NCBI RefSeq assembly: GCF_006345805.1
Contig: NC_043006.1
Location: 97,092,001 to 97,156,000, forward strand
Direction: 5' to 3'
Length of the DNA: 64,000 nt
DNA from: Octopus sinensis
Taxonomy: Eukaryota
Shown: positions 10,163-59,574 of the stretch, piece after piece
Layout: every line of letters begins with the position of its first letter
Numbering within the stretch: the stretch's first letter is position 1
Program-made: the position numbers and the translations under genes
Notes under the pieces: model-generated
The model's input: only the letters and a program-made list of their open reading frames with translations
Database searches by the model: none
What the model was told of the DNA's origin: nothing

Positions 10163-10738
10163 CTACATACATACATATACACACATACATACATACATAC
10201 ATGCATACATACATACATACATACATACACACATACATACATACATACATACACATACATACATACATACACATACATACATACATACATACATACATAC
10301 ATACATACATAGACACATACATACATACATACATACATTCATACATACATTCATACATACATACATACATACACATACATACATACATACACACATACAT
10401 ACATACATTCATACATACATACATACATGCATACATACATACACACAAACATACATACATACATACATACACATACATGCATACATACATACATACATAC
10501 ATACATGCATACATACATACATACATACATACACACACATACATACACACATGCATACATACATACATACATACATACGTGCATACATACATACATACAT
10601 ACATACATACATACATACATACATACATACATACATACATTCATACATACATACATACATACATACATACATACATACATACATACATACATACATACAT
10701 ACACACACATACACACATACATACATACGTGCGTACTT
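10163..10738. repeat. (CATA)n array, ~0.57 kb
   Basis: Direct reading. Confidence 0.95.
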
Positions 10739-13249: not shown

Positions 13250-13385
13250 ACTCTTAGTTTCCGTTTACCAAATCTACTCCGAGGGCTTTGGTCGACCTGG
13301 GGCTATTATAGAAGACACTTGTCCAAGGTGCTGTACTGTGGGACTGAACCCGGAACCATGCGGTTGAAAGGTACACTTCTTACCG
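13250..13385 (-). mobile_element. CORE-type SINE, 5' half
   Basis: Matches the head half of the 7767-8167 family. Confidence 0.75.
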
Positions 13386-13519
13386 TCTAATGTACAATTC
13401 AACATATGGTGGAAACTGACCTTTGGCTTCGTTTAATGATATTTTCCCAAAGTACCACTTCGACGGATCAAATCCGGGATTATGTGAATGCAAAGCGAAC
13501 TCCTAAAACCGTTCGGCCA

Positions 13520-14830
13520 TGCATGCATACATACATACATACACATATACATACATACATACACACATACATACATACATATATACATACATACATACAT
13601 ACATACACATATACATGCATACATACATACATACATACACACATACATACATACACACATACATACATACATACATACATACATACATACATACATACAT
13701 ACATGCATACATACATACACACATACATACATACATACATACAGCATACATACATACATACATACATACATACATACATCATACATACATGCATACATAC
13801 TACATACATACACACATACATACTACAACATACATACATACATGCATACATACATACATACATACACACATGCATACATACACGCATACATACATACATA
13901 CATACATACATGCATACATACATACATACATACATACATACATACATACACATATACATACATACATACATACATGCATACATACATACATACATACACA
14001 CATGCATACATACACGCATACATACATACATACATACATGCATACATACATACATACATACACACATGCATACATACACGCATACATACATACATACATA
14101 CATGCATACATACATACATACTTACATACATGCATACATACATGCATACATACATACACACATACATACATACACACATACATACATACATACATACATA
14201 CATACATACACATATACATGCATACATACATACATACATACATGCATACATACATACATACATACACACATGCATACATACACGCATACATACATACATA
14301 CATACATGCATACATACATACATACATACATACATACATACATACATACATACATACATACATACAGCATAATAACATACATACATACTGCATACATACA
14401 TACATACCTACATACATACATACATACATACATACATACACATACATACATACATACATACATACATGCATACATACATACATACTACATACATGCATAC
14501 ATACATACATACATACATGCATACATACATACATACATACTACATACATACATACATACATACATGCATACATACATACATACATGCATACATACATACA
14601 TGCATACATACATAATACATGCATCATACATACATAATACATACATACATACATGCATACATACATACATACATACATACACGCATACATACATCATACA
14701 TACATGCATACATACATACATACATACATACATACATACATACATACATACATACATACATACATACATACATACATACATACATACATGCATACATACA
14801 TACATACATACATACACATATACATGCATA
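13520..14830. repeat. (CATA)n array, ~1.3 kb, with higher-order CATG/CACG variants
   Basis: Direct reading; source of the 480-aa HTYI ORF. Confidence 0.95.
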
Positions 14831-15196
14831 TATTATGTACATAGGTAGGGTAAAATGCCAGCTGTTTCCTCTTGAAGCACATCTGCTTATTCCATTATTA
14901 CAATCCAATATGTGGCTGCATCAATACATATTAAAGTTGAAATTTCTGGAAATATTTTTACAGAGTTATTGTATAACAACACAGGAAGTTGGAAAATTTA
15001 TTATTATTATTTATTAACTATTACACATGTTCCATTTGCTAATGTCATTCTATTTTTCTGTCTGAAGAATTTCTAATCGGAAATTCCACACATGTTTATC
15101 TAACGTGTAAAACTCTGTGATTCCTATTAGCAAATGAAACATGTGTAATGGTGGATAAATAATACCAATACACTTTCCAACATTCTACTTTGTTGC

Positions 15197-15761
15197 ACAT
15201 ACATACATACATACATACATACATACATACATACAAACATACATGTATACATACATACATACATACATACATACATACATACATACATACATACATACAT
15301 ACACACATACATACATACATACATACATACACACATACATACATACATACATACATACATACATACATACACACATACATACATTCATATATACATACAT
15401 ACATACATACAAACATACATGTATACATACATACATACATACATGCATACATACATACATACATACATACACACATACATACATACATACATACATACAT
15501 ACATACATACAAACATACATGTATACATAACATACATCACATACATACATACATACATACATACACACATACATACATTCATATATACATACATACATGC
15601 ATGCATACATATATACATACATACATACATGCATGCATGCATACATACATACATACATACATACATGCATGCATACATACATACATACATACATACATAC
15701 ATACATACACACACACACATACATACATACCTACATACATACATACATACATACACATACA

Positions 15762-15794
<33 letters not shown>

Positions 15795-16480: not shown

Positions 16481-16484
16481 AGCA

Positions 16485-16512
16485 TATATACATACATACA
16501 TACATACATACA

Positions 16513-16545
<33 letters not shown>

Positions 16546-16756
16546 CCATCCATTCATCCATCCAAACATACATACATGCATACATACATACATACGTACG
16601 TACGTACGTTCGTACGTACATACATACATACATACATACATACAAACATACATACAAACATACATACATACATACATACATACATACACACATACATACA
16701 TACATACATACATACATACATACATACATACATACATACATACATACATGCATACA

Positions 16757-16788
<32 letters not shown>
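16485..16788. repeat. (CATA)n array
   Basis: Direct reading. Confidence 0.95.
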
Positions 16789-16789
<1 letters not shown>

Positions 16790-16790
<1 letters not shown>

Positions 16791-18614: not shown

Positions 18615-19789
18615 ACATTATTTTATTATATATATGTGTGTGTGTATGTGTGTGAATATGCGTGTGTGCGTATGTACCTGTGAGTGTATATATTTATGTA
18701 TGTAAATATAAATAAATAGATAGATAGATAGATAGATGTGCATACATGTATACGTATAAAAATAAATATCATGGATGTTTAAAATATACATCCATGAGAA
18801 TGTATACACGCATATGTATTTAAATAACATATTTCCCATTACCCTGTGGTGCTAATTGTAAACTTACGAAACCTTTCATAAATATAAATTAGCTAATAGA
18901 TTTTACAGTCTTAACTTTAACCAGATATTTAATAAGCAACATTTCATAACGTGTCTTGCACATACGCACGCTCCCCTACACACACACACATACACACACA
19001 CACACTCACACACACTCGCACTCACATAGACACACATGCACATTCAAGTATACACGCCTGCACACACACACACACACACACGCGTATACACACGCATTCG
19101 CACGTACGCATACATACACACATATGCACACAGATGCAGGAAACAGACACATTATAACGCATAGCACACACAATCAATCTCTCTCTACCTCTCACTCTCT
19201 CTTTTCCTTTCCCTCTCTGTGTGTGTCTCTTTCGCCCTCTCCCCTCTCTCTACCTCTCTCTCTCTCTCTCTCGTTCTCTCTCTCTCTCGTTCTCTCCCTC
19301 TCGTTCTTTTTGTGTCTTTCTCCCTCTCCTCGCAATATATTTCGCACACACACACCACACACATACTTACGTATATACATACATACATACATACATACAC
19401 ACATACACACACGTGTGTGTGTGTGTGTATTTTGTATATATGTAAGTGTGTGTGTACGTGTAATTCCCCTTAGCCTGCTTCTCACTCATTGGCCGCAGAA
19501 GCATGGTTTCATATTGCAGTCAATTAATCGTCTACAGTTTAATATTTAGTCAAAATGTGGCAATTTATTAAGAATTAAGAAAGAAAATTTCTTCTGACAT
19601 CTATATGAATAAAATTTTACGGAGAAGGCGGGAAAGGGGAGAGAAAGACAGAGAGAAATAGAGAGACAGAGGGACAGACAGAGGTAGAGATAGAGAGATA
19701 GGTCTACGTATATGTATTTACATATGCATGTATCCATATATACACATATAAATATATGTATTATATATATATATATATATTATATATAT

Positions 19790-20000
19790 ATATTAAGTTA
19801 ATCCAAACAAGAAAACAAAAAGACAACAACGCGAGGACGTGGAACAAATAAAGTATTACTGGACGCTCAGGAAAGAAGGGAAGAAGGAGGGTTTGACGTT
19901 TCGAGCGGAGCTCTTCGTCGGAAACATAGGAGAAGGAAAGATCCCGAGAAGGGAAGACAGAGGTAAAAAAATCGCTAGTGATACAGACGGGGTCACATAC
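19790..20000 (-). mobile_element. Penelope pLTR-like repeat with a variant hammerhead (family B, 19891-19925)
   Basis: GTTT-CCGACGA-A-GAGC(TCC)GCTC-GAAA-C-GTC-AAAC on the minus strand. Confidence 0.55.
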
Positions 20001-23442: not shown

Positions 23443-23520
<78 letters not shown>

Positions 23521-23649
23521 GATCTGTCTATCTATATATCTATCTATCTATCTCAATCTATCTATTTATCTATCTATCTATTTATCTATCTATCTAATCT
23601 ATCTATCTATATATCTATCTATCTATATCTATCTATCTATATATCTATA

Positions 23650-23684
<35 letters not shown>

Positions 23685-23743
23685 TTATCTATCTAATCTA
23701 TCTATCTATCTATCTATCTATCTTATCTATCTATCTATCTATC

Positions 23744-23807
<64 letters not shown>

Positions 23808-23824
23808 CTATCTATCTATCTATC

Positions 23825-23889
<65 letters not shown>

Positions 23890-23960
23890 GTCTCTCTATC
23901 GATCTATCTATCATCTATCTTCTTATCTATCTATCTACCTATCAATCTAACTACCTATCC
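23440..23960. repeat. (TATC)n array
   Basis: Direct reading. Confidence 0.95.
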
Positions 23961-24236
23961 TTCTGCTTATTTATCTATCTGTCTTTCTCTCCTCTTTCCC
24001 TCTCTCTCCCTCTCTCATATATGTGCGCGCGCGTGTGTGTGTGTGTGCATGTGTGCCAAAAGTTTGTGATCAACAGACATTAACAGTAAAATAAAAGACA
24101 TCTATTCTTGCACATGTCCATACATACGCTCACGCACACACATGTATGTATATGTATGTATATATATATATATTATATATATATGTATATATGTATGTAC
24201 ACGTTTCGTGACGTCCTGTGCCCACATATTCATATA

Positions 24237-33591: not shown

Positions 33592-33691
33592 NNNNNNNNN
33601 NNNNNNNNNNNNNNNNNNNNNNNNNNNNNNNNNNNNNNNNNNNNNNNNNNNNNNNNNNNNNNNNNNNNNNNNNNNNNNNNNNNNNNNNNNN
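33592..33691. other. Assembly gap (100 N)
   Basis: Run of N. Confidence 1.
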
Positions 33692-34377: not shown

Positions 34378-35371
34378 ATGGATAACAGTTTCATGCAATC
34401 AAGCAGTGAATCTGAATTTGAGAAGTTTTCAACGGAAGATACAAAGAAATTGAACACCATACAAGTGAAAAACAAAAGCATGTGCTGTATCAAAATGAAT
34501 TTAAAACTATTTTTACAAACAATTTTTCAGAAGAGACTGGACCTACTCATATGTGGAGTACCAAACTTCAATCCATAATTTAAAATCAGACCTGTCATCA
34601 AATGCATAAAAACGACTCTACAACCCAGGTACATACATGTAGTGATGCTGCTGTGTAAGGTTCAGCGCACATGCGCAGAATGGGATTGCTTCCAGTTGGC
34701 CACCGGAAGTCTTCCCCCATGCGCATGTGCGGGGAAACTGACCCCTAAAACGCTGTTCGCTCATTCATCCTTTCTGGCCCTAACAGCCTTCGAGAACGGA
34801 CGTGTACTGGCAGTCTCTGTGGACTTCATACCAGCCAAGCAGCGAACCACGACGAATCATTTCGACCAACAAACAAGAATCAGTACTACAGATTCGGCTG
34901 TCGGTTTCCCTCCAGAGAACACGTACACCAGTTCTACATTACGACGAGAAATAAACACCATTACTTTGCTGTGTTCGTAGACAACCTGACTTGTCTGTTA
35001 TTTTTAACTAAAATTGAAGGTGACGGGATCAGATCGGACACCCCTCCAGTGATACCGAATCCAGATCCTGTTACATACCTATCCGTTGATAAAGGCAGAA
35101 TACATTTCCTATGATATATGCCAGGAAAACCCACAAAGTAGGGAATCAAAGTCTGGAAGATTTGTGAAGCAAATATGGGGTACTGCTGTGGGTATAGTTA
35201 TAATTCAGAAAGAAGAGAAATGATCTAAGTCAGCATGGCCTAGGGCACAATGAAGTTTGGAATTTATCACTTCCATACCATAACCAGGACTGTATATCTT
35301 TTGACCAATTTTTTAGTTTAGTCAAACATGTGATGGATATAATTGCGACAACATACACATGTGCTACAGTA
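34378..35371 (+). pseudogene. piggyBac-family transposase, 5' half (deleted, frameshifted, LTR-interrupted)
   Basis: MDNSFMQSSSESEFE; FKIRPVI; YNPGTYLSVD (after removing the LTR); KGRIHFL*YMPGKPTK*GIKVWKICEA; HGLGHNEVWNL; FDQFFSLVKHVMDIIATTYTCATV. Confidence 0.85.
34638..35075 (+). mobile_element. Solo LTR (Gypsy-like), 438 bp
   Basis: TGTAGTGATGC...ATCCTGTTACA termini; AATAAA present; 4-bp flanks TACA/TACC; excision restores the YNPGTYLSVD reading. Confidence 0.8.
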
Positions 35372-35578
35372 GTGACACTGGATATTGGGAATCATAAGGA
35401 AATGACACCATTGCTGGAAGCCGTCTCCGGGGCCCACCTCGGAATTATCCATAAACTCATCATACATGGTGCAAATGTAAATGCTGTCGACAATGATGGT
35501 AATAATTGTTTACCCCTCTCCATAATAAAAAAAGAGAGGTTCCATTCTGAGGAGGAACATATTCCCATTTTAGATGAG
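35372..35578 (+). CDS. Ankyrin-repeat exon fragment (resembles Mind bomb-type E3 ligase ankyrin repeats), copy 1
   Basis: VTLDIGNHKEMTPLLEAVSGAHLGIIHKLIIHGANVNAVDNDGNNCLPLSI fits the ANK consensus TPLxxA..G...++..L+..GA.VN..D..G; ends GAG|GTAAGT. Confidence 0.75.
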
Positions 35579-38500
35579 GTAAGTTTTTAAAATTGTTTGT
35601 GAATATGTGTGTGTGTGGTTGGCATTAGGAAGGGTATGCAACCGCAGAAACTATGCCATAAGAAAATGACACCATTGCTTGAAGCTGTCTCCGGGGCCCA
35701 CCTCGGAATTATCCATAAAATTATCATACATGGTGCAAATGTAAATGCTGTCGACAATGATGGTAATAATTGTTTACATCTCTCCATAATAAAAAAAGAG
35801 ATATTCCATTCTGAGTTGGAAACCATTCCCATTTTAGATGAGGTAAGTTTTTAAAATTGTTTGTGAATATGTGTGTGTGTGGTTGGCATTAGGAAGGGCA
35901 TGCAACCGCAGAAACTATGCCATAAGGAAATAACACCATTGCTGGAAGCCGTCACCGGGGCCCACCTCGGAATTATCCATAAACTAATCATACATGGTGC
36001 AAATATGAATGCCAACGACAATGATGGTAATAATTGTTTAAATCTCTCCATAATAAAAAAAGAGATGTTCTATTCTGAGGTGGAAACCATTCCCATTTAA
36101 ATGAGGTAAGTTCTTAAAATTGTTTGTGAATATGTGTGTGTGTGGTTGGCATTAGGAAGGGCATGCAACCGCAGAAACTATGCCATAAGGAAATAACACC
36201 ATTGCTGGAAGCCGTCACCGGGGCCCACCTCGGAATTATCCATAAACTAATCATACATGGTGCAAATATGAATGCCAACGACAATGATGGTAATAATTGT
36301 TTACCCCTCTCCATAATAAAAAAAGAGAGGTTCCATTCTGAGGAGGAACATATTCCCATTTTAGATGAGGTAAGTTTTTAAAATTGTTTGTGAATATGTG
36401 TGTGTGGTTGGCATTAGGAAGGGCATGCAACCGCAGAAACTATGCCATAAGAAAATAACACCATTGCTGGAAGCCGTCTCCGGGGCCCACCTCGGAATTA
36501 TCCATAAAATTATCATACATGGTGCAAATGTAAATGCTGTCGACAATGATGGTAATAATTGTTTACCCCTCTCCATAATAAAAAAAGAGATGTTCTATTC
36601 TGAGGTGGAAACCATTCCCATTTTAGATGAGGTAAGTTTTTAAAATAGTTTGTGAATGTGTGTGTGGTTGGCATTAGGAAGGGCATACAACCGCAGAAAC
36701 TATGCCATAAGAAAATGACACCATTACTGGAAGCCGTCTCCGGGGCCCACCTCGGAATTATCCATAAACTCATAATACATGGTGCAAATGTAAATGCTGT
36801 CGACAATGATGGTAATAATTGTTTACATAGCTCCATAATAAAGAAAGAGATGTTCCATTCTGAGGTGGAAAAAATTCCCATTTTAGATAAGGTAAGTTCT
36901 TAAAATTGTTTGTGAATATGTGTGTGTGGTTGGCATTAGGAAGGGTATGCAACCGCAGAAACTATGCCATAAGAAAATGACACCATTGCTTGAAGCTGTC
37001 TCCGGGGCCCACCTCGAGATTATCCATAAACTCATCATACATGGTGCAAATATGAATGCTGTCGACAATGATGGTAATAATTGTTTACACCTCTCCATAA
37101 TAAAAAAAGAGATATTCCATTCTGAGGTGGAAACCATTCCCATTTTAGATGAGGTAAGTTCTTAAAATTGTTTGTGAATATGTGTGTGTGGTTGGCATTA
37201 GGAAGGGCATGCAACCGCAGAAACCATGCCATAAGAAAATGACACCATTGCTTGAAGCTGTCTCCGGGGCCCACCTCGGAATTATCCATAAACTCATCAT
37301 ACATGGTGCAAATATGAATGCCGTCGACAATGATGGTAATAATTGTTTACACCTCTCCATAATAACAAATGAGATGTTCCATTCTGAGGTGGAAACCATT
37401 CCCATTTTAGATGAGGTAAGTTTTTAAAATTGTTTGTGAATATGTGTGTGTGTGGTTGGCATTAGGAAGGGCATGCAACCGCAGAAACTTTGCCATAAGA
37501 AAATAACACCATTTCTGGAAGCCGTCTCCGGGGCCCACCTCGGAATTATCCATAAAATTATCATACATGGTGCAAATATGAATGCCAACGACAATGATGG
37601 TAATAATTGTTTACACCTCTCCATAATAAAGAAAGAGATGTTCCATTCTGAGGAGGAGCATATTCCCATTTTAGATGAGGTAAGTTTTTAAAATTGTTTG
37701 TGAATATGTGTGTGTGGTTGGCATTAGGAAGGCATGCAACCACAGAAACTATGCCATAAGAAAATAACACCATTGCTGGAGCCGTCTCCGGGGCCCACCT
37801 CGGAATTATCCATAAACTCATAATACATGGTGCAAATATGGATGCCAACGACAATGATGGTAATAATTGTTTACACCTCTCCATAATAAAGAAAGAGATG
37901 TTTTATTCTGAGGTGGAAAATATTCCCATTTTAGATGAGGTAAGTTTTTAAAATTGTTTGTGAATATGTGTGTGTGGTTGGCATTAGGAAGGGCATGCAA
38001 CTGCAGAAACTATGCCATAAGAAAATAACACCATTTCTGGAAGCAGTCTCCGGGGCCCACCTCGGAATTATCCATAAAATTATCATACATGGTGCAAATA
38101 TGAATGCCAACGACAATGATGGTAATAATTGTTTACACCTCTCCATAATAAAGAAAGAGATGTTCTATTCTCAGGTGGAAACCATTCCCATTTTAGATGA
38201 GGTAAGCTTTTAAAATTGTTTGTAAAATATGTGTGTGTGTGGTTGGCATTAGGAAGGGCATGCAACCGCAGAAACTATGCCATAACAAAATAACACCATT
38301 GCTGGAAGCCGTCTCCGGGGCCCACCTCGAAATTATCCATAAACTCATCATACACGGTGCAAATGTAAATGCTGTCGACAATGATGGTAATAATTGTTTA
38401 CACCTCTCCATAATAAAAAAAGAGATGTTCCATTCTGAGGTGGAAAATATTCCCATTTTAGATGAGGTAAGTTCTTAAAATTGTTTGTGAATATGTGTGT

Positions 38501-39846
38501 GTGGTTGGCATTAGGAAGGGCATGCAACCGCAGAAACTATGCCATAAGAAAATAACACCATTTCTGGAAGCCGTCTCCGGGCCCACCTCGGAATTATCCA
38601 TAAACTTATCATACATGGTGCAAATGTAAATGCTGTCGACAATGATTAATAGGTAACATTGTTACACCTCTCCATAAAAAAAAGATGTTCCATTCTGAGG
38701 TGGAAAATATTCCCATTTTAGATGAGGTAAGTTCTTAAAATTGTTTGTGAATGTGTGTGTGTGGTTGGCATTAGGAAGGGCATGCAACCGCAGAAACTAC
38801 GCCATAAGAAAATAACACCATTGCTTGAAGCCGTCCGGGGCCCACCTCGGAATTATCCATAAACTCATCATACTGGTGCAATATAATGAATGCCGTCGAC
38901 ATGATGGTAATAATTGTTTACACCTCTCCATAATAAAAAAAGAGATGTTCTATTCTGAGGTGGAAAATATTCCCATTTTAGATGAGGTAAGTTCTTAAAA
39001 TTGTTTGTGAATATGTGTGTGTGTGGTTGGCATTAGGAAGGGCATGCAACCGCAGAAACTATGCCATAAGAAAATAACACCATTGCTTGAAGCCGTCTCC
39101 TCCGGGGCCCACCTCGAATTATCCATAAACTCATCATACATGGTGCAAATGTAAATGCTCTCGACAATGATGGTAATAATTGTTTACACCTCTCCATAAT
39201 AAAAAAAGAGATTTCCATTCTGAGGTGGAAACCATTCCCATTTTAGATGAGGTAAGTTTTTAAAATTGTTTGTGAATATGTGTGCGTGTGGTTGGCATTA
39301 GGAAGGGCATGCAACCGCAGAAACTTTGCCATAAGAAAACAAAACTATTTCTGGAAGCCGTCTCCGGGGCCCACCTCGGAATTATCCATAAACTTATCGT
39401 ACATGGTGCAAATATGAATGCCAACGACAATGATGGTAATAATTGTTTACATCTCCATAATAAAGAAAGAGATGTTCCATTCTGAGGTGGAAACCATTCC
39501 CATTTTAGATGAGGTAAGTTTTTAAAATTGTTTGTGTGGTTGGCATTAGGAAGGGCATGCAACCGCAGAAACTATGCCATAAGAAAATAACACCATTGCT
39601 GGAAGCCGTCACTGGGGCCCACCTCGGATTATCCATAAAATATAATTATCATACATGGTGCAAATATGAATGCCAACGACAATGATGGCGATAATTGTTT
39701 ACACCCCTCTCCATAATAAAGAAAGAGATGTTCTATTCTGAGGTGGAAACCATTCCCATTTTAGATGAGGTAAGTTTTTAAAATTGTTTGTGAATATGTG
39801 TGTGTGGTTGGCATTAGGAAGGGCATGCAACCGCAGAAACTATGCC
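35393..39846 (+). repeat. Tandem array of 17 x ~262-bp units (ankyrin exon + donor + intron start + SINE piece)
   Basis: Unit starts (CATAAG/CATAAC) near 35393, 35657, 35921, 36184, 36446, 36707, 36968, 37230, 37494, 37755, 38016, 38281, 38544, 38804, 39066, 39330, 39579. Confidence 0.95.
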
Positions 39847-40782
39847 AAAACTGGCAATTGGTGCCTGAGCAGCTCTGCAGCTGCCCAGCTTCTGCCGAAC
39901 TATCCAACCCATGCCAGCATAGAAAACGAATTAAAAATGATGATGAGGAGGATGTGTGTATGTGTGAGTGAGAGAAATAGAGAAACAGGCAGATATTGTT
40001 GGCTATTTTCTTTCACTCCCATCCACTTCTCTTCCTTTAGTATTAAATAGTTCAGTTTCCCCCCTGATAGCACTAGTTGTATTATGTAACTAACAATATT
40101 CCATCTTCTTTCACCTTCAAAAGCATGGCCACTGCACTGTAAAGAATGTAACCCATCTTAAATATGTGTCATGTAACACTGCTATCACTGTATGAAGGAG
40201 AGGTGACCAACGACAGAGATAAGTCTTTAAATTTAGAAAAGAGAAATTCACAAACTGTTTTAAATATCGAATTTCAAGTTAACGAGTTGAACTGTGTTAA
40301 TTGCTAGAAAGCATACTTCATTATTCTTTTTCAAAGAAAGGAAAAGGAAAATAAATTGTTTATGGACAATTAAATTTAAAGAAAACATACTCATGGAATT
40401 CGAAGAAAGTTTCTTTTATCAGTATGACAATGAATATATAACTGAGTTTATTCAAAGTTGATAATTAGGGTTCCAAATATTGCCAGGGATTGGACTTTGT
40501 GTGTATATTGACTACAGTAATACCCCTTGCAATGATTGTAAAGAAGGGAGATGTGAGGAGAATGAATTTACATTAAGATGTGTGCACAAAAGTGCAATGT
40601 CCCGAGATTGTATGTATGATGATGTAACTAGACAGATAGTCTAGAGGCCCTTTGTTACCAACAAGATAGCTCTCTGAACTTTGCCCTGCTTAATCTTATT
40701 CTAGCAGCTATGCTCTTGGCGCATCCACCTCCACTACTGACCTGATTACCTATATAACACAGTAGCTATCAACCACTTCTAG

Positions 40783-40837
<55 letters not shown>

Positions 40838-41179
40838 TGAATAGTCGAATATTTAGATATATATTGTGGATGTCCGCTTGCTTTACATGGTACAATCATG
40901 GTTTATATTATTATTATTTTAATATTAGTGACTTTTTGTGTGGTTATACGGACTGTTAAATATATATGCCTGCTTCAAATTTAAATGTGAGTGTACATGT
41001 ATTTCCTTGATGTTGGTTATAGAACTATGAGTTCAATATGGAACATTATTGTGTTTGTTAATGTATATTGATATATATTGTTTATATTGTATTATTGTGT
41101 ATATATATGTGTAGAATTATGAGTGTGTATGCACACATTTTTATATTTATATGTAAATTTTTTTCATACTTACATTAAA

Positions 41180-41290
41180 TTCTCTGAAGAGGCCGTGAGA
41201 CATTCTTGTTAATGTCTCATTTATACCTGCTTTATATGGCTAATAGGTTAAATGGGACATACCTGTCTTCACGGCCGAAACAGCTGTCAG
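41180..41290 (+). ncRNA. Type-I hammerhead ribozyme motif (family F)
   Basis: CT-CTGAAGA-GGCCGTGA[...]TCACGGCC-GAAA-CAGCTG-T-C-AG; palindromic helix III, only 2-bp helix I. Confidence 0.6.
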
Positions 41291-41877
41291 CTACAATGTA
41301 AATGTATTTTTATTTCTATGTCTTGTTATATTTGTAATATATTATGTATAATGTCATTACTGTTGTGTAATGGTTTAATATTGATTGGGTATTATCTGAT
41401 GGTTGATGATTGATTTAGGTATGTTTCTCCATTTTCTCATTTTGTATATATATATATATAATATATATATATGTGTGTGTGTGTGTGGTGTGTGTGGTGT
41501 GTGTGTGTTTGTTTGAAAGACCTCAGCATCTATCCACTGGTAGATCTGATGGTGTTTATTGTCTGTTGTTGCAGAATTTAAGCAACTCTTTGATTCCCTA
41601 ATATGTAACGGTCACTACAGATGTGTGTAGAAAGGGATCCTTAGTCGTAGTGAAGGCAATCTATCTAGGGAGATAACCTTATAATAAATCACTCGGTCCG
41701 TTTAGAAATACTGGGTTGACGTCCAGCGGGAACAGCTTTGTTTCATGGAGGTGGAAAGATCTTCTTTAGTACATGGTTGTACAATGCTTTCCAATGTGCG
41801 CAGTAGTGGCGCGCGCACACATTATTAGCCATTTGAAAAGACTATGAGTCTCGACCATGGTCGAAAATGATGATGAT

Positions 41878-42500
41878 GCTAGTAGAAAAGGGTTGTCAGT
41901 GGATATGAAAAAAGCAAAATTAAAACAAAAAAAAAGTGAAATAATCCAAGAGCTGAAAAGAAATCTATCTACCTATGCACAACCATGTGTAGATGAAAAC
42001 GGCACCCTGTTTGTAAACCTTGATTATAACAGGTACATGGGCAGCGTAGATCAGCTGAATCAAATAATAAGCTATTATCCAGTTGGTACACTGGGTAATA
42101 AATGATGGTGATACCTGGATGTCCTTCCTAACACACACCACCACTCCAAGCGTGTAGCCAACCATTCCAAGAGTGTTCATATTATATAGCAAATCAGGAG
42201 GGGCTTGAAGCAGCGTGACCATCTGCAGCTCTCCAAGCAACTGTAGCAACACAGTTGAGGAAACGTTATTCCTTCAACAAAATAGGACAGAAAGCCAAAG
42301 CCTGCCAGAGAGACATCCCTCTCAATTAAGCCAATCTCCACAATAAAAAAAAATTAAAAAATTGAGGGTGCCGTGAATGGCTGCATCAACAAAACTCCCA
42401 GTGGATGGACAGTTGAAACTTCTTTCCAATGGGCATTTTGCAAGGGCGCAATATGTAGAATGGGATGTTTTACAAGTTTCTATGACAGAAATATTGTGAA
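41878..42500 (+). pseudogene. piggyBac-family transposase, 3' half
   Basis: ASRKGLSVDMKKAKLKQK; DYNRYMGSVDQLNQIISYY; K*W*YL; Cys-rich tail CKGAICRMGCF. Confidence 0.85.
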
Positions 42501-46977: not shown

Positions 46978-47749
46978 TGTAGTGATGCCATCTTGGAAAT
47001 CTCCAGCACGCATGCGCAGAGCTGGATTCTTCCAGGAGGCCTGCCAGAAGTTCCCTCATGCGCATGCGCAGAGCTGGATTCTTCCGGGAGGCCCGCCAGA
47101 AGTTCCCTTATGCGCATGTGCAGAGCTGGATTCTTCCGGGAGGCCCGCCAGAAGTTCCCTTATGCGCAGAGCTGGATTCTTCCGGGAGGCCCGCCGGAAG
47201 TTCCCTCATGCGCATGCACAGAGCTGGATTCTTCCAGGAGGCCCGCCGGAAGTTCCCTCATGCGCAGAGCTGGATTCTTCCAGGAGGCCCGCCAGAAGTT
47301 CCCTCATGCGCAGAGCTGGATTCTTCCGGGAGGCCCGCCAGACGTTTGCGCATGCGCAGAGCTGGATTCTTCCTGGAGGCCCGCCAGAAGTTCCCTCATG
47401 CGCATACGCAGAAAACTAGCAGCAGCGAAATTCCCTTGTATCGTTCTCTCGAACGCCAGCAGCTGAACAAGACAGTCGTGTTTTATCAGCTCTCTCAAAC
47501 TGCTACCTCGTGGCGTGTCTCTGCTATGCCTGAACGGACAGGATTTGGCTCACTCCACTTGACTACTGTGATAAGCTCCTAGGCTGCCGATTCGCCCAGA
47601 AAGAAGAATGTATACATTGCGAATCAAGAAATAAATATTTATACTGTTGAAGTTAAATCGGAAGTCTTGACTCTTTCCTTCGATTAATATTTAATGTAAA
47701 AGGATGCGAGCTGCACCCTTCCAGTGCAGGGACCTCCCATCCTGTTACA
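46978..47749 (+). mobile_element. Solo LTR with perfect 4-bp TSD
   Basis: GTAT|TGTAGTGATGC...ATCCTGTTACA|GTAT; same termini as 34638-35075; AATAAA at ~47631. Confidence 0.9.
47010..47408 (+). promoter_or_regulatory. 8 tandem 46/52-bp repeats in the LTR carrying NRF1-like, GC-box and ETS-like motifs
   Basis: Unit GCGCAGAGCTGGATTCTTCCRGGAGGCCCGCCRGAAGTTCCCTCAT(GCGCAT); TGCGCATGCGCA, CCCGCC and CCGGAAGT are visible. Confidence 0.6.
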
Positions 47750-49689: not shown

Positions 49690-50520
49690 TCTCAGGCAGA
49701 TTGTAAGATACCTGTGTGTAAACAGCTATGCTACACAGCAGTGAAACATGGGTTGTGACAGCTGAGGACATGCATAGGCTTCAAAGAAATGAAGCCAGTA
49801 TGCTTCGCTAGATATGCATGCTAATAGAGTGTAAACATCTTGAGAGAAAAGTCGAGCATAAGAAGCATCAGATGTGATGTGCAAGAGAGACAACTGTGCT
49901 GGTATGGTCATGTGATACAGATGGATGAAGACAGCTGTGTAAAGAAGTGCTAATTTCTGTGGAGGGAACCTGTGGTGGAGGTAGACTCAAGAAGACATGG
50001 GATGAGGTGGTGAAGCATGATCTTCCAACTTTGCGCCTCACAGACGCAATGGATGGAAGCACTCCGTCGGTTACGACGACGAGGGTTCCGGTTGATCTGA
50101 ATCAACGGAACAGCTTGCTCGTGAAATTAACGTGTAAGTGGCTGAGCACTCCACAGACACGTTCACCCTTAACGTAGTTCTCGGGGATATTCAGCGTGAC
50201 ACAGAGAGTGACAAGGCCGGCCCTTTGAAATACAGATACAACAGAAACAGGAAAAAAGAGTGAGAGAAAGTTGTGGTGAAAGAGTACAGCAGGGATCACC
50301 ACCATTCCCTGCCGGGGCCTCATGGAGCTTTAGGTGTTTTCACTCAATAAAAATTCACAACGCCCGGTCTGGGAATTGAAACCGTGATCTTATGACCGCG
50401 AGTCCGCTGCCCTAACCACTGGGCCATTGCGCCTCCACACAGACGCAATGACTAGTGATGGAAACTTTTGGCAATATGCTGTGCTTGAGAAAACCCGTCA
50501 AGCCAACTGAAATCATAGTC
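49690..50520 (+). mobile_element. RTE LINE 3' ORF2 fragment interrupted by a SINE
   Basis: SETWVVTAEDMHRLQRNEASML; WYGHVIQMDEDSCVKKC; GRLKKTWDEVVKHDL. Confidence 0.75.
50052..50437 (-). mobile_element. tRNA-derived SINE family 2 with TSD
   Basis: 13-bp TSD CACAGACGCAATG at 50039-50051 and 50438-50450. Confidence 0.9.
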
Positions 50521-55498: not shown

Positions 55499-56207
55499 CA
55501 CTTGCATTTCTCTTCAACATTCATGTATATGTCCATATGCATATACATGCACACATGAATATATGTATACATACATGCATATATTTACACACTATGTACT
55601 GAATTTTGCATTTCTTTACATTAGCAAACCTACAACAGTCAGATATCAAACTGATTGAGGCAAAGTTCAGATGTAAATAATAATAAAAAGACCCTTCATC
55701 ACCAAAAGATTCATACTTCAAATCATCATCATCATTTAGCGTCCGCTTTCCATGCTAGCATGGGTTGAACGGTTCAACTGGGGTCTGTGAAGCCAGAAGG
55801 CTGCATCAGGCCCAGTCTGATCTGGCAGTGTTTCTACAGCTGGATGCCCTTCCTAACGCCAACCACTCCGTGAGTGTAGTGGGTGCTTTTTACGTGCCAC
55901 CCGCACAGGTGCCAGACAAAGCTGGCAAACGGCCACGGACGGATGGTGCTTTTTACGTGCCACCAGCACGGGGGCCAGGCGAGGCTGGCAATGGCCACAA
56001 TCGGATGGTGCTTTTTACGTGCCACCGGCACGGGGGCCAGGCGAGGCTGGCAACAGCCACGAACGGATGGTGCTTTTACGTGCCACCAGCACAGGGGCCA
56101 GGCGAGGCTGGCAACAGCCACGAACGGATGGTGCTTTTACGTGCCACCGGCACTTCAAATGTCTCAACAAATTTATGAATTCAGAATTTATAAGCCAAAC
56201 TACTTAC

Positions 56208-57097: not shown

Positions 57098-57640
57098 CTC
57101 TCTTTTACTTGTTTCAGTCATTTGACTGCGGCCATGCTGGAGCACTGCCTTTAATCAAGCAACTCGACCCCAGGACTTATTCTTTGTAAGCCAAGTACTT
57201 ATTCTATCGGTCTCTTTTTGCAGAACCGCTAAGTGATGGGGACGTAAACACACCCCAGCATCGGTTGTCAAGCAAGCTAGGGGGACAAACACAGACACAC
57301 ATATATATATTATTATTATTATTACTATTTTCAGCTTCGCCTTGTATTGCATATTATTTCTCCATACAGGGGTTTTTTTCAATGGCGGCCCATTTTCGCG
57401 GGGTCCACTATTTCCCTTCTCTCTCTCCCTCTATTACGTTGTCTGCCATCCCCCCTCTTCTTTGCTAAGAGCATTTTTAAGCCAGCCCGTCATATTCCGT
57501 GTCAGGCCGAAGAACGAAATGTTCCCAAGATAAGAGAGTCTTTCTAATCTAATGTTGTGGTTGAGCTGTTTATTATTTATTATTATTACTATTATTAGTA
57601 GTATTAGTATTGTCCCTTTGATCCTCGGTCGAAAATTTGC

Positions 57641-57679
<39 letters not shown>

Positions 57680-58001
57680 TTACTATTTTCAGCTTCGCCT
57701 TGTATTGCATATTATTTCTCCATACAGGGGTTTTTTTCAATGGCGGCCCATTTTCGCGGGGTTCCACTATTTCCCTTCTCTCTCTCCCTCTTTTACGTTG
57801 TCTGCCATCCCCCCTCTTCCTTTGCTAAGAGCATTTTTAAGCCAGCCCGTCATATTCCCGTGTCAGGCCGAAGAACGAAATGTTCCCAAGATAAGAGAGT
57901 CTTTCTAATCTAATGTTGTGGTTGAGCTGTTTATTATTTATTATTATTACTATTATTAGTAGTATTAGTATTGTCCCTTTGATCCTCGGTCGAAAATTTG
58001 C

Positions 58002-58037
<36 letters not shown>

Positions 58038-59574
58038 TTACTATTTTCAGCTTCGCCTTGTATTGCATATTATTTCTCCATACAGGGGTTTTTTTCAATG
58101 GCGGCCCATTTTCGCGGGGTTCCACTATTTTCCTTCTCTCTCTCCCTCTTTTACGTTGTCTGCCATCCCCCCTCTTCCTTTGCTAGAGCATTTTTAAGCC
58201 AGCCCGTCATATTCCCGTGTCAGGCCGAAGAACGAAATGTTCCCAAGATAAGAGAGTCTTTCTAATCTAATGTTTGGTTGAGCTGTTTATTATTTATTAT
58301 TATTACTATTATTAGTAGTATTAGTATTGTCCCTTTGATCCTCGGTCGAAAATTTGCTTATTATTATTATTAGTATATTATTATTATTATTATTACTATT
58401 TTCAGCTTCGCCTTGTATTGCATATTATTTCTCCATACAGGGGTTTTTTTCAATGGCGGCCCATTTTCGCGGGGTTCCACTATTTCCCTTCTCTCTCTCC
58501 CTCTTTTACGTTGTCTGCCATCCCCCCTCTTCCTTTGCTAAGAGCATTTTTAAGCCAGCCCGTCATATTCCCGTGTCAGGCCGAAGAACGAAATGTTCCC
58601 AAGATAAGAGAGTCTTTCTAATCTAATGTTGTGGTTGAGCTGTTTATTATTTATTATTATTACTATTATTAGTAGTATTAGTATTGTCCCTTTGATCCTC
58701 GGTCGAAAATTGGCTTATTATTATTAGTAGTATTATTATTATATTATTACTATTTTCAGCTTCGCCTTGTATTGCATATTATTTCTCCATACAGGGGTTT
58801 TTTTCAATGGCGGCCCATTTTCGCGGGGTTCCACTATTTCCCTTCTCTCTCTCCCTCTTTTACGTTGTCTGCCATTCCCCCTCTTCCTTTGCTAAGAGCA
58901 TTTTTAAGCCAGCCCGTCATATTCCCGGTGCACCCGCCCTTGCCCACCCCCACCACCAATACCGGATATCTCTATATTTTTGCTCCATCTATACCGGATG
59001 TCGCTTCTCCCACCACCATTATAGGTGTCTACTCTTCGAACCCCCCTCTTCAATACGCTATTTCACCATGCATTACCCTCTCTTGATTATCCTACGTTCT
59101 ACTTGCCTAGAACCTGTCATCATTTCTCTGAACCACCCCTCCCCACTGGTGCTCCCCTATATTCCCCCCCCCCCCACATAAAAGCACCATCCGAACGTGG
59201 CCGATGCCAGACCCCTCTGGCACCTGTGCAGGTGGCACGTAAAAAACACCCACTACACTCGCGGAGTGGTTGGCGTTAGGAAGGGCATCCAGCTGTAGAA
59301 ACACTGCCAGACTAGACTGGAGCCTGGGGCAGTCCCTAGCTCCCCAGACCCCGGTCGAAACCGTCCAACCCGTGCTAGCGCGGAAAACGGACGTTAAACG
59401 ATGATGATGATACATATATACGACAGGCTTCTTTCAGTTTCCGTCTACCAAATCCACTCACAAGGCTTTGGTTGGCCCGAGGCTATAGTAGAAGACACTT
59501 GCCCAAGATGCCACGCAGTGGGACTGAACCCGGAACCATGTGGTTGGTTAGCAAGCTACTTACCACAGCCACTC
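57098..59574 (-). mobile_element. CORE-type SINE split at its central microsatellite (57098-57307 and 59412-59574)
   Basis: The two halves join into one family-length copy. Confidence 0.8.
57310..58926. repeat. Tandem array, ~4.5 units of 354-358 bp
   Basis: CAGCTTCGCC anchors at 57332, 57690, 58048, 58403, 58757; units nearly identical. Confidence 0.95.

What the first reader, a model, noticed from the sequence alone, without database searches (positions are those of the whole stretch)
35393..39846. Seventeen-copy tandem array of an ankyrin-repeat exon cassette with mosaic amino-acid variants
Seen: 17 units of ~262 bp. Each encodes TPLLEAVSGAHLGIIHKLIIHGANVNAVDNDGNNCLHLSIIKKE..PILDE and ends GAG|GTAAG (AAG|GTAAG in copy 6). 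Substitutions (M/I, L/F, S/T, G/E, L/I, V/M, V/N, P/H/N, R/I/M, H/Y, H/T/K/N) recur in shuffled combinations. By my reading 10 copies are frame-intact (1,2,4-9,11,12). Unit junctions join a SINE (..ACTATGC) to CATAAG inside the exon; after the last unit the SINE continues normally, so it grew from one exon+intron segment. Inference: unequal crossover or gene conversion created a Dscam-like or repeat-number-variable ankyrin cassette. Similarity to Mind bomb-type E3 ankyrin repeats is from recalled motifs, not a search.
Basis: partly seen in the sequence, partly recalled or inferred. Interest (0 to 1): 0.8.

Follow-up and report, generated by a model that had tools for sequence, protein, structure and literature searches.

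The report
Pseudo-exon minisatellite inside a dead transposon
The 17-copy array is real, but it is a tandemly amplified scrap of an octopus ankyrin/RING (MIB2-like) gene that sits, without the rest of that gene, inside a decayed piggyBac transposon, so it is most likely inert repeat DNA rather than a set of alternative exons.

Summary
There are 17 head-to-tail units of about 262 bp at 35393-39847. Each unit holds a 186-nt ankyrin-coding exon tail, a GTAAG donor and about 76 nt of intron that runs into a SINE-like repeat. Ten units keep the frame (1, 2, 4-9, 11, 12), and the variants are shuffled between units.

The functional reading is not supported, for these reasons:
- The units lack the parent exon's splice acceptor.
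- The parent gene's other parts (ANK run, exon 2, RING exon) are absent from all 64 kb.
- The whole block, about 35371-41880, interrupts a piggyBac-like transposase pseudogene exactly between homologue residues 191 and 192.
- Three parent-like loci in Octopus sinensis and O. vulgaris each carry one unit, with a proper acceptor and downstream exons.
- Seven units are frameshifted.
- Private mutations look neutral: 10 synonymous against 22 non-synonymous, and the same per-site rate in exon and intron.

My best explanation is that a gene fragment was copied into a dead transposon. One microhomology-mediated duplication followed, and unequal crossover and gene conversion then expanded and shuffled the units.

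One thing stays unexplained: shared variants are enriched in the exon part, and some are the same alleles that separate the O. sinensis paralogues. Interest is low to moderate.

The parts
33592..33691 (.). Run of 100 N (assembly gap) 1.7 kb upstream of the array
   Evidence: It shows the window comes from a scaffolded assembly. The array itself contains no N.
35043..35377 (+). piggyBac-like transposase pseudogene, 5' part. It matches residues 72-191 of the scallop piggyBac-like protein P0009, in two frames with in-frame stops.
   Evidence: tblastn of P0009; Pfam DDE_Tnp_1_7 at 21.3 bits on this piece alone; piggyBat and piggyBac transposase chains 9c0f and 6x67.
35371..35392 (+). Start of the copied gene fragment: 22 nt of the parent exon upstream of the repeated part. 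The parent acceptor and the first 5 nt of the exon (GATTC) are missing. The fragment overlaps the transposon sequence by up to 7 nt (AGTGACA).
   Evidence: Homology to L001 9970-, L002 9970- and L004 9832- starts here in all three loci. Junction printed.
35393..39847 (+). 17-unit tandem array, period about 262 bp. Each unit is a 186-nt ankyrin-coding exon tail, a GTAAG donor, about 76 nt of intron with (TG)n, and the first 43 nt or so of a SINE-like repeat. Unit starts: 35393, 35657, 35921, 36184, 36446, 36706, 36968, 37230, 37494, 37755, 38016, 38281, 38543, 38803, 39065, 39330, 39578. Intact frame: units 1, 2, 4-9, 11, 12. Broken: 3, 10, 13-17.
35204..35578 (+). Stop-free 125-codon frame that runs from transposase-derived sequence into ankyrin unit 1 (a chimeric frame). 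It has no ATG before the M inside the unit.
   Evidence: I regard it as incidental.
39804..39975 (+). SINE-like dispersed repeat that continues normally after the last unit. Its first part is the 3' end of every unit.
39848..41627 (+). Intron-derived 3' flank of the copied gene fragment. It is 90-96% identical to the intron downstream of the single-copy exon in O. sinensis and O. vulgaris. Homology ends abruptly at 41627.
41628..41880 (+). About 250 bp of unique sequence of unknown origin between the gene fragment and the resumption of the transposase. It contains a 14-nt palindrome TCGACCATGGTCGA at 41851-41864, followed 14 nt later by CTAG.
41881..42492 (+). piggyBac-like transposase pseudogene, 3' part. 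It matches P0009 residues about 192-413, including the C-terminal zinc-finger region, and has several stops.
   Evidence: tblastn. Homologues of the ORF 41848-42102 are DDE_Tnp_1_7 proteins. The joined flanks give DDE_Tnp_1_7 at 60.6 bits through the junction.

Best explanation
The array is a non-functional minisatellite of pseudo-exons.

A DNA-level copy of part of an octopus ANK-plus-RING ('MIB2-like') gene was inserted into the reading frame of an already resident piggyBac-like transposon. The copy held the exon without its first 5 nt and acceptor, plus about 1.9 kb of the following intron with its SINE-like repeat.

Within that fragment, one illegitimate duplication joined ...ACTATGC (in the SINE-like repeat) to CATAAG... 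(in the exon). The two breakpoints share only CA, or CA[T/A]AA if one mismatch is allowed. That gave a 262-bp direct repeat. Unequal crossover or replication slippage then expanded it to 17 units. Recombination and gene conversion between units, and probably with paralogous copies of the exon, shuffled the variants.

Shown:
- the array and its unit anatomy;
- the missing acceptor and missing partner exons;
- the split transposase;
- the single-copy state at three parent-like loci;
- the mosaicism;
- neutral-looking private mutations.

Inferred:
- the order of events;
- the mechanism by which the fragment was inserted;
- the lack of transcription.
For: (1) Anatomy. The unit starts 28 nt inside the parent exon and ends in the intron, so no unit carries the native acceptor.

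(2) Parent-like loci. O. sinensis L001, O. vulgaris L002 and the O. sinensis paralogue L004 each have one unit. Each also has a 75%-pyrimidine acceptor, a downstream exon 2 and, in L004, a RING exon (zf-C3HC4_3, 41 bits).

(3) Missing partners. The window has no exon 2, no RING exon and no upstream ANK run.

(4) Limits of homology. Homology to the parent loci is confined to 35371-41627.

(5) Split transposase. Immediately outside that block lie the two halves of one piggyBac-like transposase: P0009 residues 72-191 end at 35377, and residues about 192-413 begin at about 41881. The joined flanks match DDE_Tnp_1_7 at E=2.1e-16 in a single stretch that crosses the junction. In the scallop relative the ORF is uninterrupted. 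No piggyBac sequence lies near the parent loci.

(6) Decay. Seven of 17 units are frameshifted or stopped. Private substitutions are 10 synonymous to 22 non-synonymous, against 21-27% synonymous expected (p=0.31). Singleton columns are equally frequent in exon (28/186) and intron (10/76).

(7) Mosaic. 205 of 378 site pairs fail the four-gamete test.
Against: - pN/pS among the ten intact units is 0.48, not 1. Most of that signal comes from shared, older variants that may have been inherited or converted from paralogues that were under selection.
- Ten intact 62-codon frames out of 17 is more than long neutral decay would leave, although the array may simply be young: intron diversity is 2.8%.
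- Shared variants are enriched in the exon part, 25/186 against 3/76 (Fisher p=0.027). Pure neutral drift within the array does not explain this.
- An AG 9 nt upstream of each unit would give in-frame 195-nt exons, so splicing is not formally impossible.
- No expression data or reads were available.
- The species of the window, and so whether the parent loci are orthologues or paralogues of the source, is unresolved.
Confidence: 0.85

Rival explanations
1. The units are working cassette exons. They are either spliced one at a time (Dscam-like) or in series, to give an ankyrin protein with a variable number or choice of repeats.
For: - Every unit keeps a consensus donor, GTAAG.
- Ten units keep the frame.
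- The SINE-derived CAG|AAACTATGC lies 9 nt (3 codons) upstream of each unit. Donor-to-CAG splicing would give 195-nt exons in phase 0 at both ends.
- pN/pS among intact units is 0.48.
- Variation is concentrated in the coding part.
Against: - The candidate acceptor has 35% pyrimidines, against 75% at real acceptors of the same gene family, and its introns would be 65-70 nt.
- There is no upstream or downstream exon of the gene in 64 kb.
- The block is embedded in a transposase pseudogene.
- Seven units are broken, five of them in a row at the 3' end.
- Private changes are neutral.
- The exon is single-copy in O. sinensis and O. vulgaris.
- No protein with more than one unit exists among 5.8 billion clustered proteins.
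- The unit encodes one ANK repeat, a third of the next and a non-ANK linker. Serial inclusion would not make a regular 33-residue ANK stack (inference).
Confidence: 0.04
2. The copy number is an assembly artefact. The real locus has fewer units, or one, and the assembler expanded it.
For: The window comes from a scaffolded assembly with a 100-N gap 1.7 kb upstream. Tandem arrays are a classic place for mis-assembly. No reads could be checked.
Against: All 17 units differ from one another by 3-9% and carry unit-specific indels. An assembler loop over one or a few units would give identical copies. The array has no N, and both of its flanks join cleanly to homologous single-copy sequence.
Confidence: 0.07
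3. This is an alternative for how the fragment arrived. It was carried into the piggyBac relic by another mobile element that had captured it (Helitron-like or a Pack-type element), rather than by repair synthesis or template switching at a break.
For: The 3' end of the insert reads TCGACCATGGTCGA (a palindrome), then 14 nt, then CTAG, followed by T of the transposase. From my own knowledge this resembles a Helitron 3' end. About 250 bp of foreign sequence lies between the gene fragment and the transposase. TIR elements and Helitrons expanded in octopus about 25 My ago (PMC13282606).
Against: The 5' end does not start with TC after an A. It overlaps the transposase by a 5-7 nt microhomology, which is typical of end joining or template switching. 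The palindrome is short, with a 5-7 bp stem. The 250-bp piece has no other copy in the window or in the fetched loci. No second copy of the composite could be looked for.
Confidence: 0.15
4. The array is kept as a reservoir of donor sequences for gene conversion into the expressed parent exon, as pseudogene-templated diversification works in chicken immunoglobulin genes.
For: Five of the 14 exon sites that separate the O. sinensis paralogues L001 and L004 segregate for the same two alleles inside the array, against none of the 5 intron sites. The EEEHI variant of units 1, 4 and 9 recurs as EVEHI in P0002. Shared variants are enriched in the exon. So sequence has moved between copies of this exon.
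Against: The direction of transfer is unknown, and flow into the array fits just as well. Nothing indicates that the parent gene needs diversity. The frameshifted units and neutral private changes show no maintenance.
Confidence: 0.03

Closest known systems
Minisatellites or tandem segmental amplifications that grow by unequal crossover and replication slippage from one founding duplication
   Same: The units are head to tail with a constant period of 262 bp. A single junction type with 2-5 nt of microhomology is shared by all units. Variants are mosaic between units, and indels accumulate.
   Different: Most of the unit is protein-coding sequence from a real gene, with its splice donor. This makes the array look like an exon cluster.
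Host gene fragments embedded in DNA transposons (transduplication: Pack-MULEs, Helitron and CACTA gene capture)
   Same: An intron-containing, truncated piece of a cellular gene lies inside transposon sequence, on the transposase strand, and is even frame-continuous for 125 codons.
   Different: Here the fragment interrupts the transposase ORF of a decayed piggyBac-like copy. It does not sit between the terminal repeats of a non-autonomous element. No terminal repeats, TTAA sites or further copies were found, so capture and mobilisation are not shown. Filler DNA at a repaired break fits as well.
Clusters of mutually exclusive alternative exons (Dscam1 exons 4, 6 and 9; similar clusters in other arthropod and molluscan genes)
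   Same: There are tandem, similar, same-length coding units with conserved donors and variable residues.
   Different: Dscam-type units each carry their own acceptor and donor. They lie between constitutive exons, are all intact and are conserved between species. None of these holds here.
Mind bomb 2 (MIB2)-like ANK-plus-RING E3 ligases
   Same: The source gene in O. sinensis and O. vulgaris is named MIB2-like by NCBI. It has ankyrin repeats and, in the paralogue L004, a C-terminal zf-C3HC4_3 RING.
   Different: Only 62 codons of it, one and a third ANK repeats plus a linker, are present in the window. The N-terminal MIB/HERC2, ZZ and REP domains that define Mind bomb proteins were seen neither in the window nor in the fetched parent loci.

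Membership tests
Ankyrin repeat (Pfam PF00023) | Match to the Ank profile above Pfam's gathering score | tested here: met
   The consensus unit peptide scores 30.5 bits (gathering score 21.1), E=3.8e-7, residues 5-34. Two joined units give two Ank matches.
Mind bomb (MIB1/MIB2) E3 ubiquitin ligase | C-terminal RING finger(s) after the ankyrin region | tested here: not met
   The window has no RING exon (tblastn, best E=0.11). The parent paralogue L004 does have one: zf-C3HC4_3 at 41 bits, stitched across frameshifts.
Mind bomb (MIB1/MIB2) E3 ubiquitin ligase | N-terminal MIB/HERC2 domains, ZZ zinc finger and REP repeats | not tested
   I did not search for these domains by profile in the window or in the parent loci. 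The 'MIB2-like' name is NCBI's automatic name for P0001.
Cluster of alternative cassette exons (Dscam-like) | Each unit has its own functional 3' splice site (acceptor with a polypyrimidine tract) | tested here: not met
   The native acceptor lies outside the repeated segment and is absent from the window. The only frame-preserving AG has 35% pyrimidines at -22..-3, against 75% at three real acceptors of the parent loci.
Cluster of alternative cassette exons (Dscam-like) | The cluster is flanked by constitutive exons of the same gene | tested here: not met
   There is no exon 2, RING exon or upstream ANK exon anywhere in 64 kb. The flanks are a transposase pseudogene.
Cluster of alternative cassette exons (Dscam-like) | All units keep an open frame, and the cluster is conserved in related species | tested here: not met
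   Seven of 17 units are broken. There is one unit in O. sinensis (two loci) and in O. vulgaris.
Cluster of alternative cassette exons (Dscam-like) | Transcripts that include one or more units | not testable with these tools
   No RNA-seq data or reads were available. No protein with more than one unit was found in the 5.8-billion-cluster protein collection.
piggyBac superfamily transposase (Pfam DDE_Tnp_1_7) - flanking element | Match to the DDE_Tnp_1_7 profile above the gathering score | tested here: met
   The joined flanks score 60.6 bits (gathering score 22.4), profile positions 138-256, in one stretch. Seven of 8 homologues of the downstream ORF are DDE_Tnp_1_7 proteins. tblastn with P0009 covers residues 72-413.
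piggyBac superfamily transposon - flanking element | Terminal inverted repeats flanked by a TTAA target duplication | tested here: inconclusive
   No inverted repeat other than SINE copies, and no TTAACCC or GGGTTAA, was found around the ORF. The N-terminal 71 residues were not found, and an assembly gap lies upstream.
Helitron-type gene capture | 5' TC and 3' hairpin plus CTRR termini, inserted between A and T | tested here: inconclusive
   At the 3' end a palindrome plus CTAG|T is present. At the 5' end TC is absent and there is microhomology instead.

The most novel reading that the evidence does not exclude
The pseudo-exon array is used after all, in one of two ways. Either it is transcribed from the transposon relic and spliced through the SINE-derived, in-frame CAG acceptor into a copy-number-variable ankyrin-like protein. 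Or it serves as a bank of donor tracts that diversify the expressed MIB2-like exon by gene conversion. The exon-restricted excess of shared variants and the alleles shared with O. sinensis paralogues leave this open.
Probability: 0.05. Interest if true: 0.8.

Novelty: new member of a known kind. Interest (0 to 1): 0.22.

Why it matters
As it stands this is a cautionary example. In a repeat-rich cephalopod genome, a tandem array of in-frame, donor-bearing 'exons' can look like a Dscam-style diversity cluster and still be a decaying gene fragment inside a dead transposon. Automatic gene predictors could easily annotate it as a multi-ankyrin protein.

It also records a concrete case of intron-containing gene DNA copied into a piggyBac-like element and then amplified. 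This is one route by which coding sequence can seed minisatellite or satellite DNA.

If the units turned out to be expressed, or used as conversion donors, it would be a new way of making ankyrin diversity. The evidence here points the other way.

Tried and rejected
- **Rest of the parent gene in the window.** tblastn with P0001, P0003, P0004, the exon 2 peptide, the 34-aa ANK consensus and the RING peptide hit only the array units.
- **Synteny upstream and downstream with 10-kb flanks of L001, L002 and L004.** Outside 35371-41627 only dispersed repeats match. One hit at window 49959-50051 is the tail of a LINE reverse transcriptase. One at 19749-19866 is next to an (AT)n tract.
- **Pfam and PDB on the downstream transposase piece alone.** Nothing was found. 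The piece was resolved only through the exhaustive HMMER search and P0009.
- **Close relatives of this piggyBac family in octopus**, to define the empty site at nucleotide level. The word-index search found none.
- **Species, or an independent assembly, by exact-protein look-up.** I tried window ORFs and P0002. None is on record.
- **piggyBac terminal repeats and TTAA sites.** None were found.
- **Rfam and tRNA scans for a SINE head.** Nothing was found.
- **Adjacent units more alike than distant ones?** There is no trend: 5.6% at lag 1 against 5.4-6.6% at lags 2-8.
- **ORFs of 100-122 aa on the minus strand across units**. I rejected these as by-products of repeating a stop-poor frame.
- **The chimeric transposase-ankyrin frame 35204-35578.** I considered a domesticated fusion and rejected it. 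The transposase carries stops and frame changes on both sides, and the frame has no start codon.
Full report

Yes. Tandem Repeats Finder reports one array at 35393-39847 with period 262, 17.0 copies, 92% matches and score 7231. Cutting at the CATAAG anchor gives 17 units of 248-265 bp.

Each unit has three parts:
- a coding part of nominally 186 nt that reads HK[KE][MI]TPLLEAVSGAHLGIIHKLIIHGANVNAVDNDGNNCLHLSIIKKEMFHSEVETIPILDE;
- a GAG|GTAAG donor (AAG|GTAAG in unit 6);
- about 76 nt of intron, made of a short (TG)n tract and GGTTGGCATTAGGAAGGGCATGCAACCGCAGAAACTATGC.

Units 1, 2, 4-9, 11 and 12 are open. Units 3, 10 and 13-17 have indels or stops.

After unit 17 the last motif continues into a dispersed repeat. 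That repeat has five further copies, at 72-74% identity, on both strands of the window. It is SINE-like, although no tRNA or Rfam family is detected.

The 'shuffled' variants are real. There are 28 parsimony-informative columns, and 205 of 378 site pairs fail the four-gamete test.

**2. What is the coding part?**

The unit peptide matches Pfam Ank (PF00023) at 30.5 bits, above the gathering score of 21.1. A search of 5.8 billion protein clusters returned only two relatives:
- P0001, 123 aa, 'E3 ubiquitin-protein ligase MIB2-like isoform X2' of Octopus vulgaris and O. sinensis;
- P0002, a 61-aa fragment.

No protein with more than one unit exists in that collection.

**3. The parent-like loci.**

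P0001 is encoded at L001 (O. sinensis CM016886.1) and L002 (O. vulgaris OX597840.1). A paralogue or divergent haplotype, 94% identical, is at L004 (O. sinensis VCDQ01005388.1).

All three loci carry exactly one unit. The exon there begins 28 nt upstream of the repeated segment, behind a good acceptor, tttttacttccacaaag|GATTC, with 75% pyrimidines.

The exon is followed, after an intron that contains the same SINE-like repeat, by exon 2 (CCKELQLDMDRRLSG...). In L004 a RING exon follows as well. When stitched across its frameshifts it matches zf-C3HC4_3 at 41 bits.

Upstream in L004 lies a long run of near-identical 34-aa ankyrin repeats. The source gene is therefore an ANK-plus-RING gene. The Mind-bomb-specific N-terminal domains were not examined.

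**4. What the window holds instead.**

Homology to the parent loci is confined to 35371-41627 and is 90-96% identical. It starts at the same base in all three comparisons and ends abruptly.

The acceptor and the first 5 nt of the exon are missing. Exon 2, the RING exon and the ANK run are absent from all 64 kb.

What lies immediately outside the block is one piggyBac-like transposase pseudogene, split in two. The scallop protein P0009 carries DDE_Tnp_1_7 (E=1.2e-66) and zf-Tnp_2. Its residues 72-191 align to 35043-35377, and residues about 192-413 align to about 41881-42492. Both pieces are on the + strand and both contain stops and frame changes.

Joining the two flanks gives a peptide that matches DDE_Tnp_1_7 at E=2.1e-16 (60.6 bits). 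The match is a single stretch, profile positions 138-256, that runs through the junction. In the scallop the ORF is uninterrupted.

The upstream half on its own weakly hits DDE_Tnp_1_7 and the piggyBat and piggyBac structures. Homologues of the downstream ORF are piggyBac transposases. No piggyBac sequence lies within 10 kb of the parent loci, and the transposon flanks have no match there.

So an insert of about 6.5 kb, or about 2.3 kb before amplification, sits inside a transposon relic. It consists of the gene fragment plus about 250 bp of unique sequence at 41628-41880. The window is not the parent gene.

**5. How the array most likely arose.**

Junctions of the insert (shown):
- The 5' junction overlaps the transposase by up to 7 nt, AGTGACA against parent AGTGAAA.
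- The 3' side has 250 bp of foreign sequence.

Inference: a DNA-level copy was made by break repair or template switching. A carrier element is a weaker alternative. The 3' end has a short palindrome followed by CTAG|T, which resembles a Helitron end, but the 5' end does not fit.

Founding duplication: every unit junction is the same...ACTATGC|CATAAG.... At the single-copy loci the two breakpoints read AAT|CATAAG and TGC|CAAAAC. They share CA, or CA[T/A]AA if one mismatch is allowed. This points to one founding microhomology-mediated duplication, followed by unequal crossover or slippage.

Recombination between units explains the mosaic. Neighbouring units are no more alike than distant ones.

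**6. Is it under selection?**

Evidence of decay:
- Seven units are broken, five of them consecutive at the 3' end.
- Substitutions private to one unit are 10 synonymous and 22 non-synonymous. Chance predicts 21-27% synonymous (binomial p=0.31).
- Singleton columns are as common in the exon (28/186) as in the intron (10/76; Fisher p=0.85).
- The only AG that would let units splice in frame, CAG|AAACTATGC (9 nt upstream, giving 195-nt exons and 65-70-nt introns), has 35% pyrimidines upstream.

Two points go the other way:
- pN/pS among the ten intact units is 0.48.
- Shared variants are enriched in the exon, 25/186 against 3/76 (p=0.027). Exon diversity is 7.3% and intron diversity is 2.8%.

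Part of that shared variation is older than the array or was imported into it. Five of the 14 exon sites that separate L001 from L004 segregate for the same two alleles among the units, against none of the 5 intron sites. The EEEHI variant also recurs in P0002 as EVEHI.

The simplest reading (inference) is ectopic gene conversion with paralogous copies of the exon, or a multi-source origin. Variants that once evolved under constraint in real genes would then have been brought into the array. I could not test this without the genome.

**7. Dating (rough inference).**

PMC13282606 equates a Jukes-Cantor distance of 0.09 with about 25 My in octopus repeats. On that scale:
- the 4-6% flank divergence from L001 corresponds to a few million years;
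- so does the 2.8% intron diversity among units.

The same paper puts the O. vulgaris / O. bimaculoides split at 13-33 My. The source copy is therefore closer than that split would predict.

The species of the window remains unresolved. Whether L001 and L004 are orthologues or paralogues of the donor is also open. Either way, every gene-context copy seen has one unit and only the transposon-embedded copy has 17.

**8. Caveats.**

No reads and no expression data were available. The window is from a scaffolded assembly, with 100 N at 33592-33691. The units are all different from one another, by 3-9%, which argues against an assembler loop. The copy number is still unverified.

**9. Verdict.**

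The functional part does not hold: it is not a Dscam-like or variable ankyrin cassette.

This is a pseudo-exon minisatellite in a gene fragment lodged in a dead piggyBac-like element. It is an ordinary kind of object in an unusual disguise, with one unexplained feature: the exon-restricted shared polymorphism.

Noticed in passing
L004:800-2700 (O. sinensis VCDQ01005388.1), + strand: Upstream of the single-copy parent exon lies a very regular tandem run of about 34-aa ankyrin repeats (GWTPLHRASYNGHTDTAKLLLQQNGTDVRVVDNA; copies 82-93% identical). The run switches between all three frames, and a 763-aa gene model covers it. A genuine, recently homogenised ANK array therefore exists in the source gene family, but not in the window.
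   Followed up: partly
L004:9827-10186 and 13317-13473: The O. sinensis paralogue of the parent exon is itself frameshifted, and its RING exon needs three frames to read. The automatic models (763 aa, 103 aa) split around these defects. This gene family is duplicating and decaying in O. sinensis too.
   Followed up: partly
window 35393-39847 (exon part against intron part of the units): Shared (parsimony-informative) variants are 3.4 times denser in the 186-nt coding part than in the 76-nt intron part (25 against 3, p=0.027), while singletons are equally dense. Five shared variants are the same allele pairs that separate the O. sinensis paralogues L001 and L004. This suggests conversion with paralogous exons, but it is unexplained.
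   Followed up: partly
window 41851-41884: A 14-nt perfect palindrome TCGACCATGGTCGA, then 14 nt, then CTAG, lies directly before the transposase resumes with T. It resembles a Helitron 3' end, but there is no matching 5' end.
   Followed up: partly
window 57308-58927: A second long-period tandem array: 358 bp x 4.5 copies at 98% identity. I did not examine it further.
   Followed up: no
window 47009-47412 and 55882-56153: Two GC-rich short tandem arrays. The first has a 46/98-bp period with 8 or 4 copies. The second has a 61/123-bp period with 4 or 2 copies and sits next to a copy of the SINE-like repeat.
   Followed up: no
window 10164-10728, 13518-15791, 16483-16790, 23443-23988: Very large tetranucleotide microsatellites, (CATA)n/(TACA)n up to 570 copies and (TCTA)n. 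These produce the long spurious ORFs in all frames.
   Followed up: no
window 49900-50100, + strand: The tail of a LINE-type reverse-transcriptase ORF (...GGGRLKKTWDEVVKHDL...). It also matches L001:21412-21504. It is a dispersed element, not evidence of synteny.
   Followed up: partly
window 33592-33691: A run of exactly 100 N: a scaffold gap 1.7 kb upstream of the array and within or next to the missing N-terminal part of the piggyBac-like element.
   Followed up: yes
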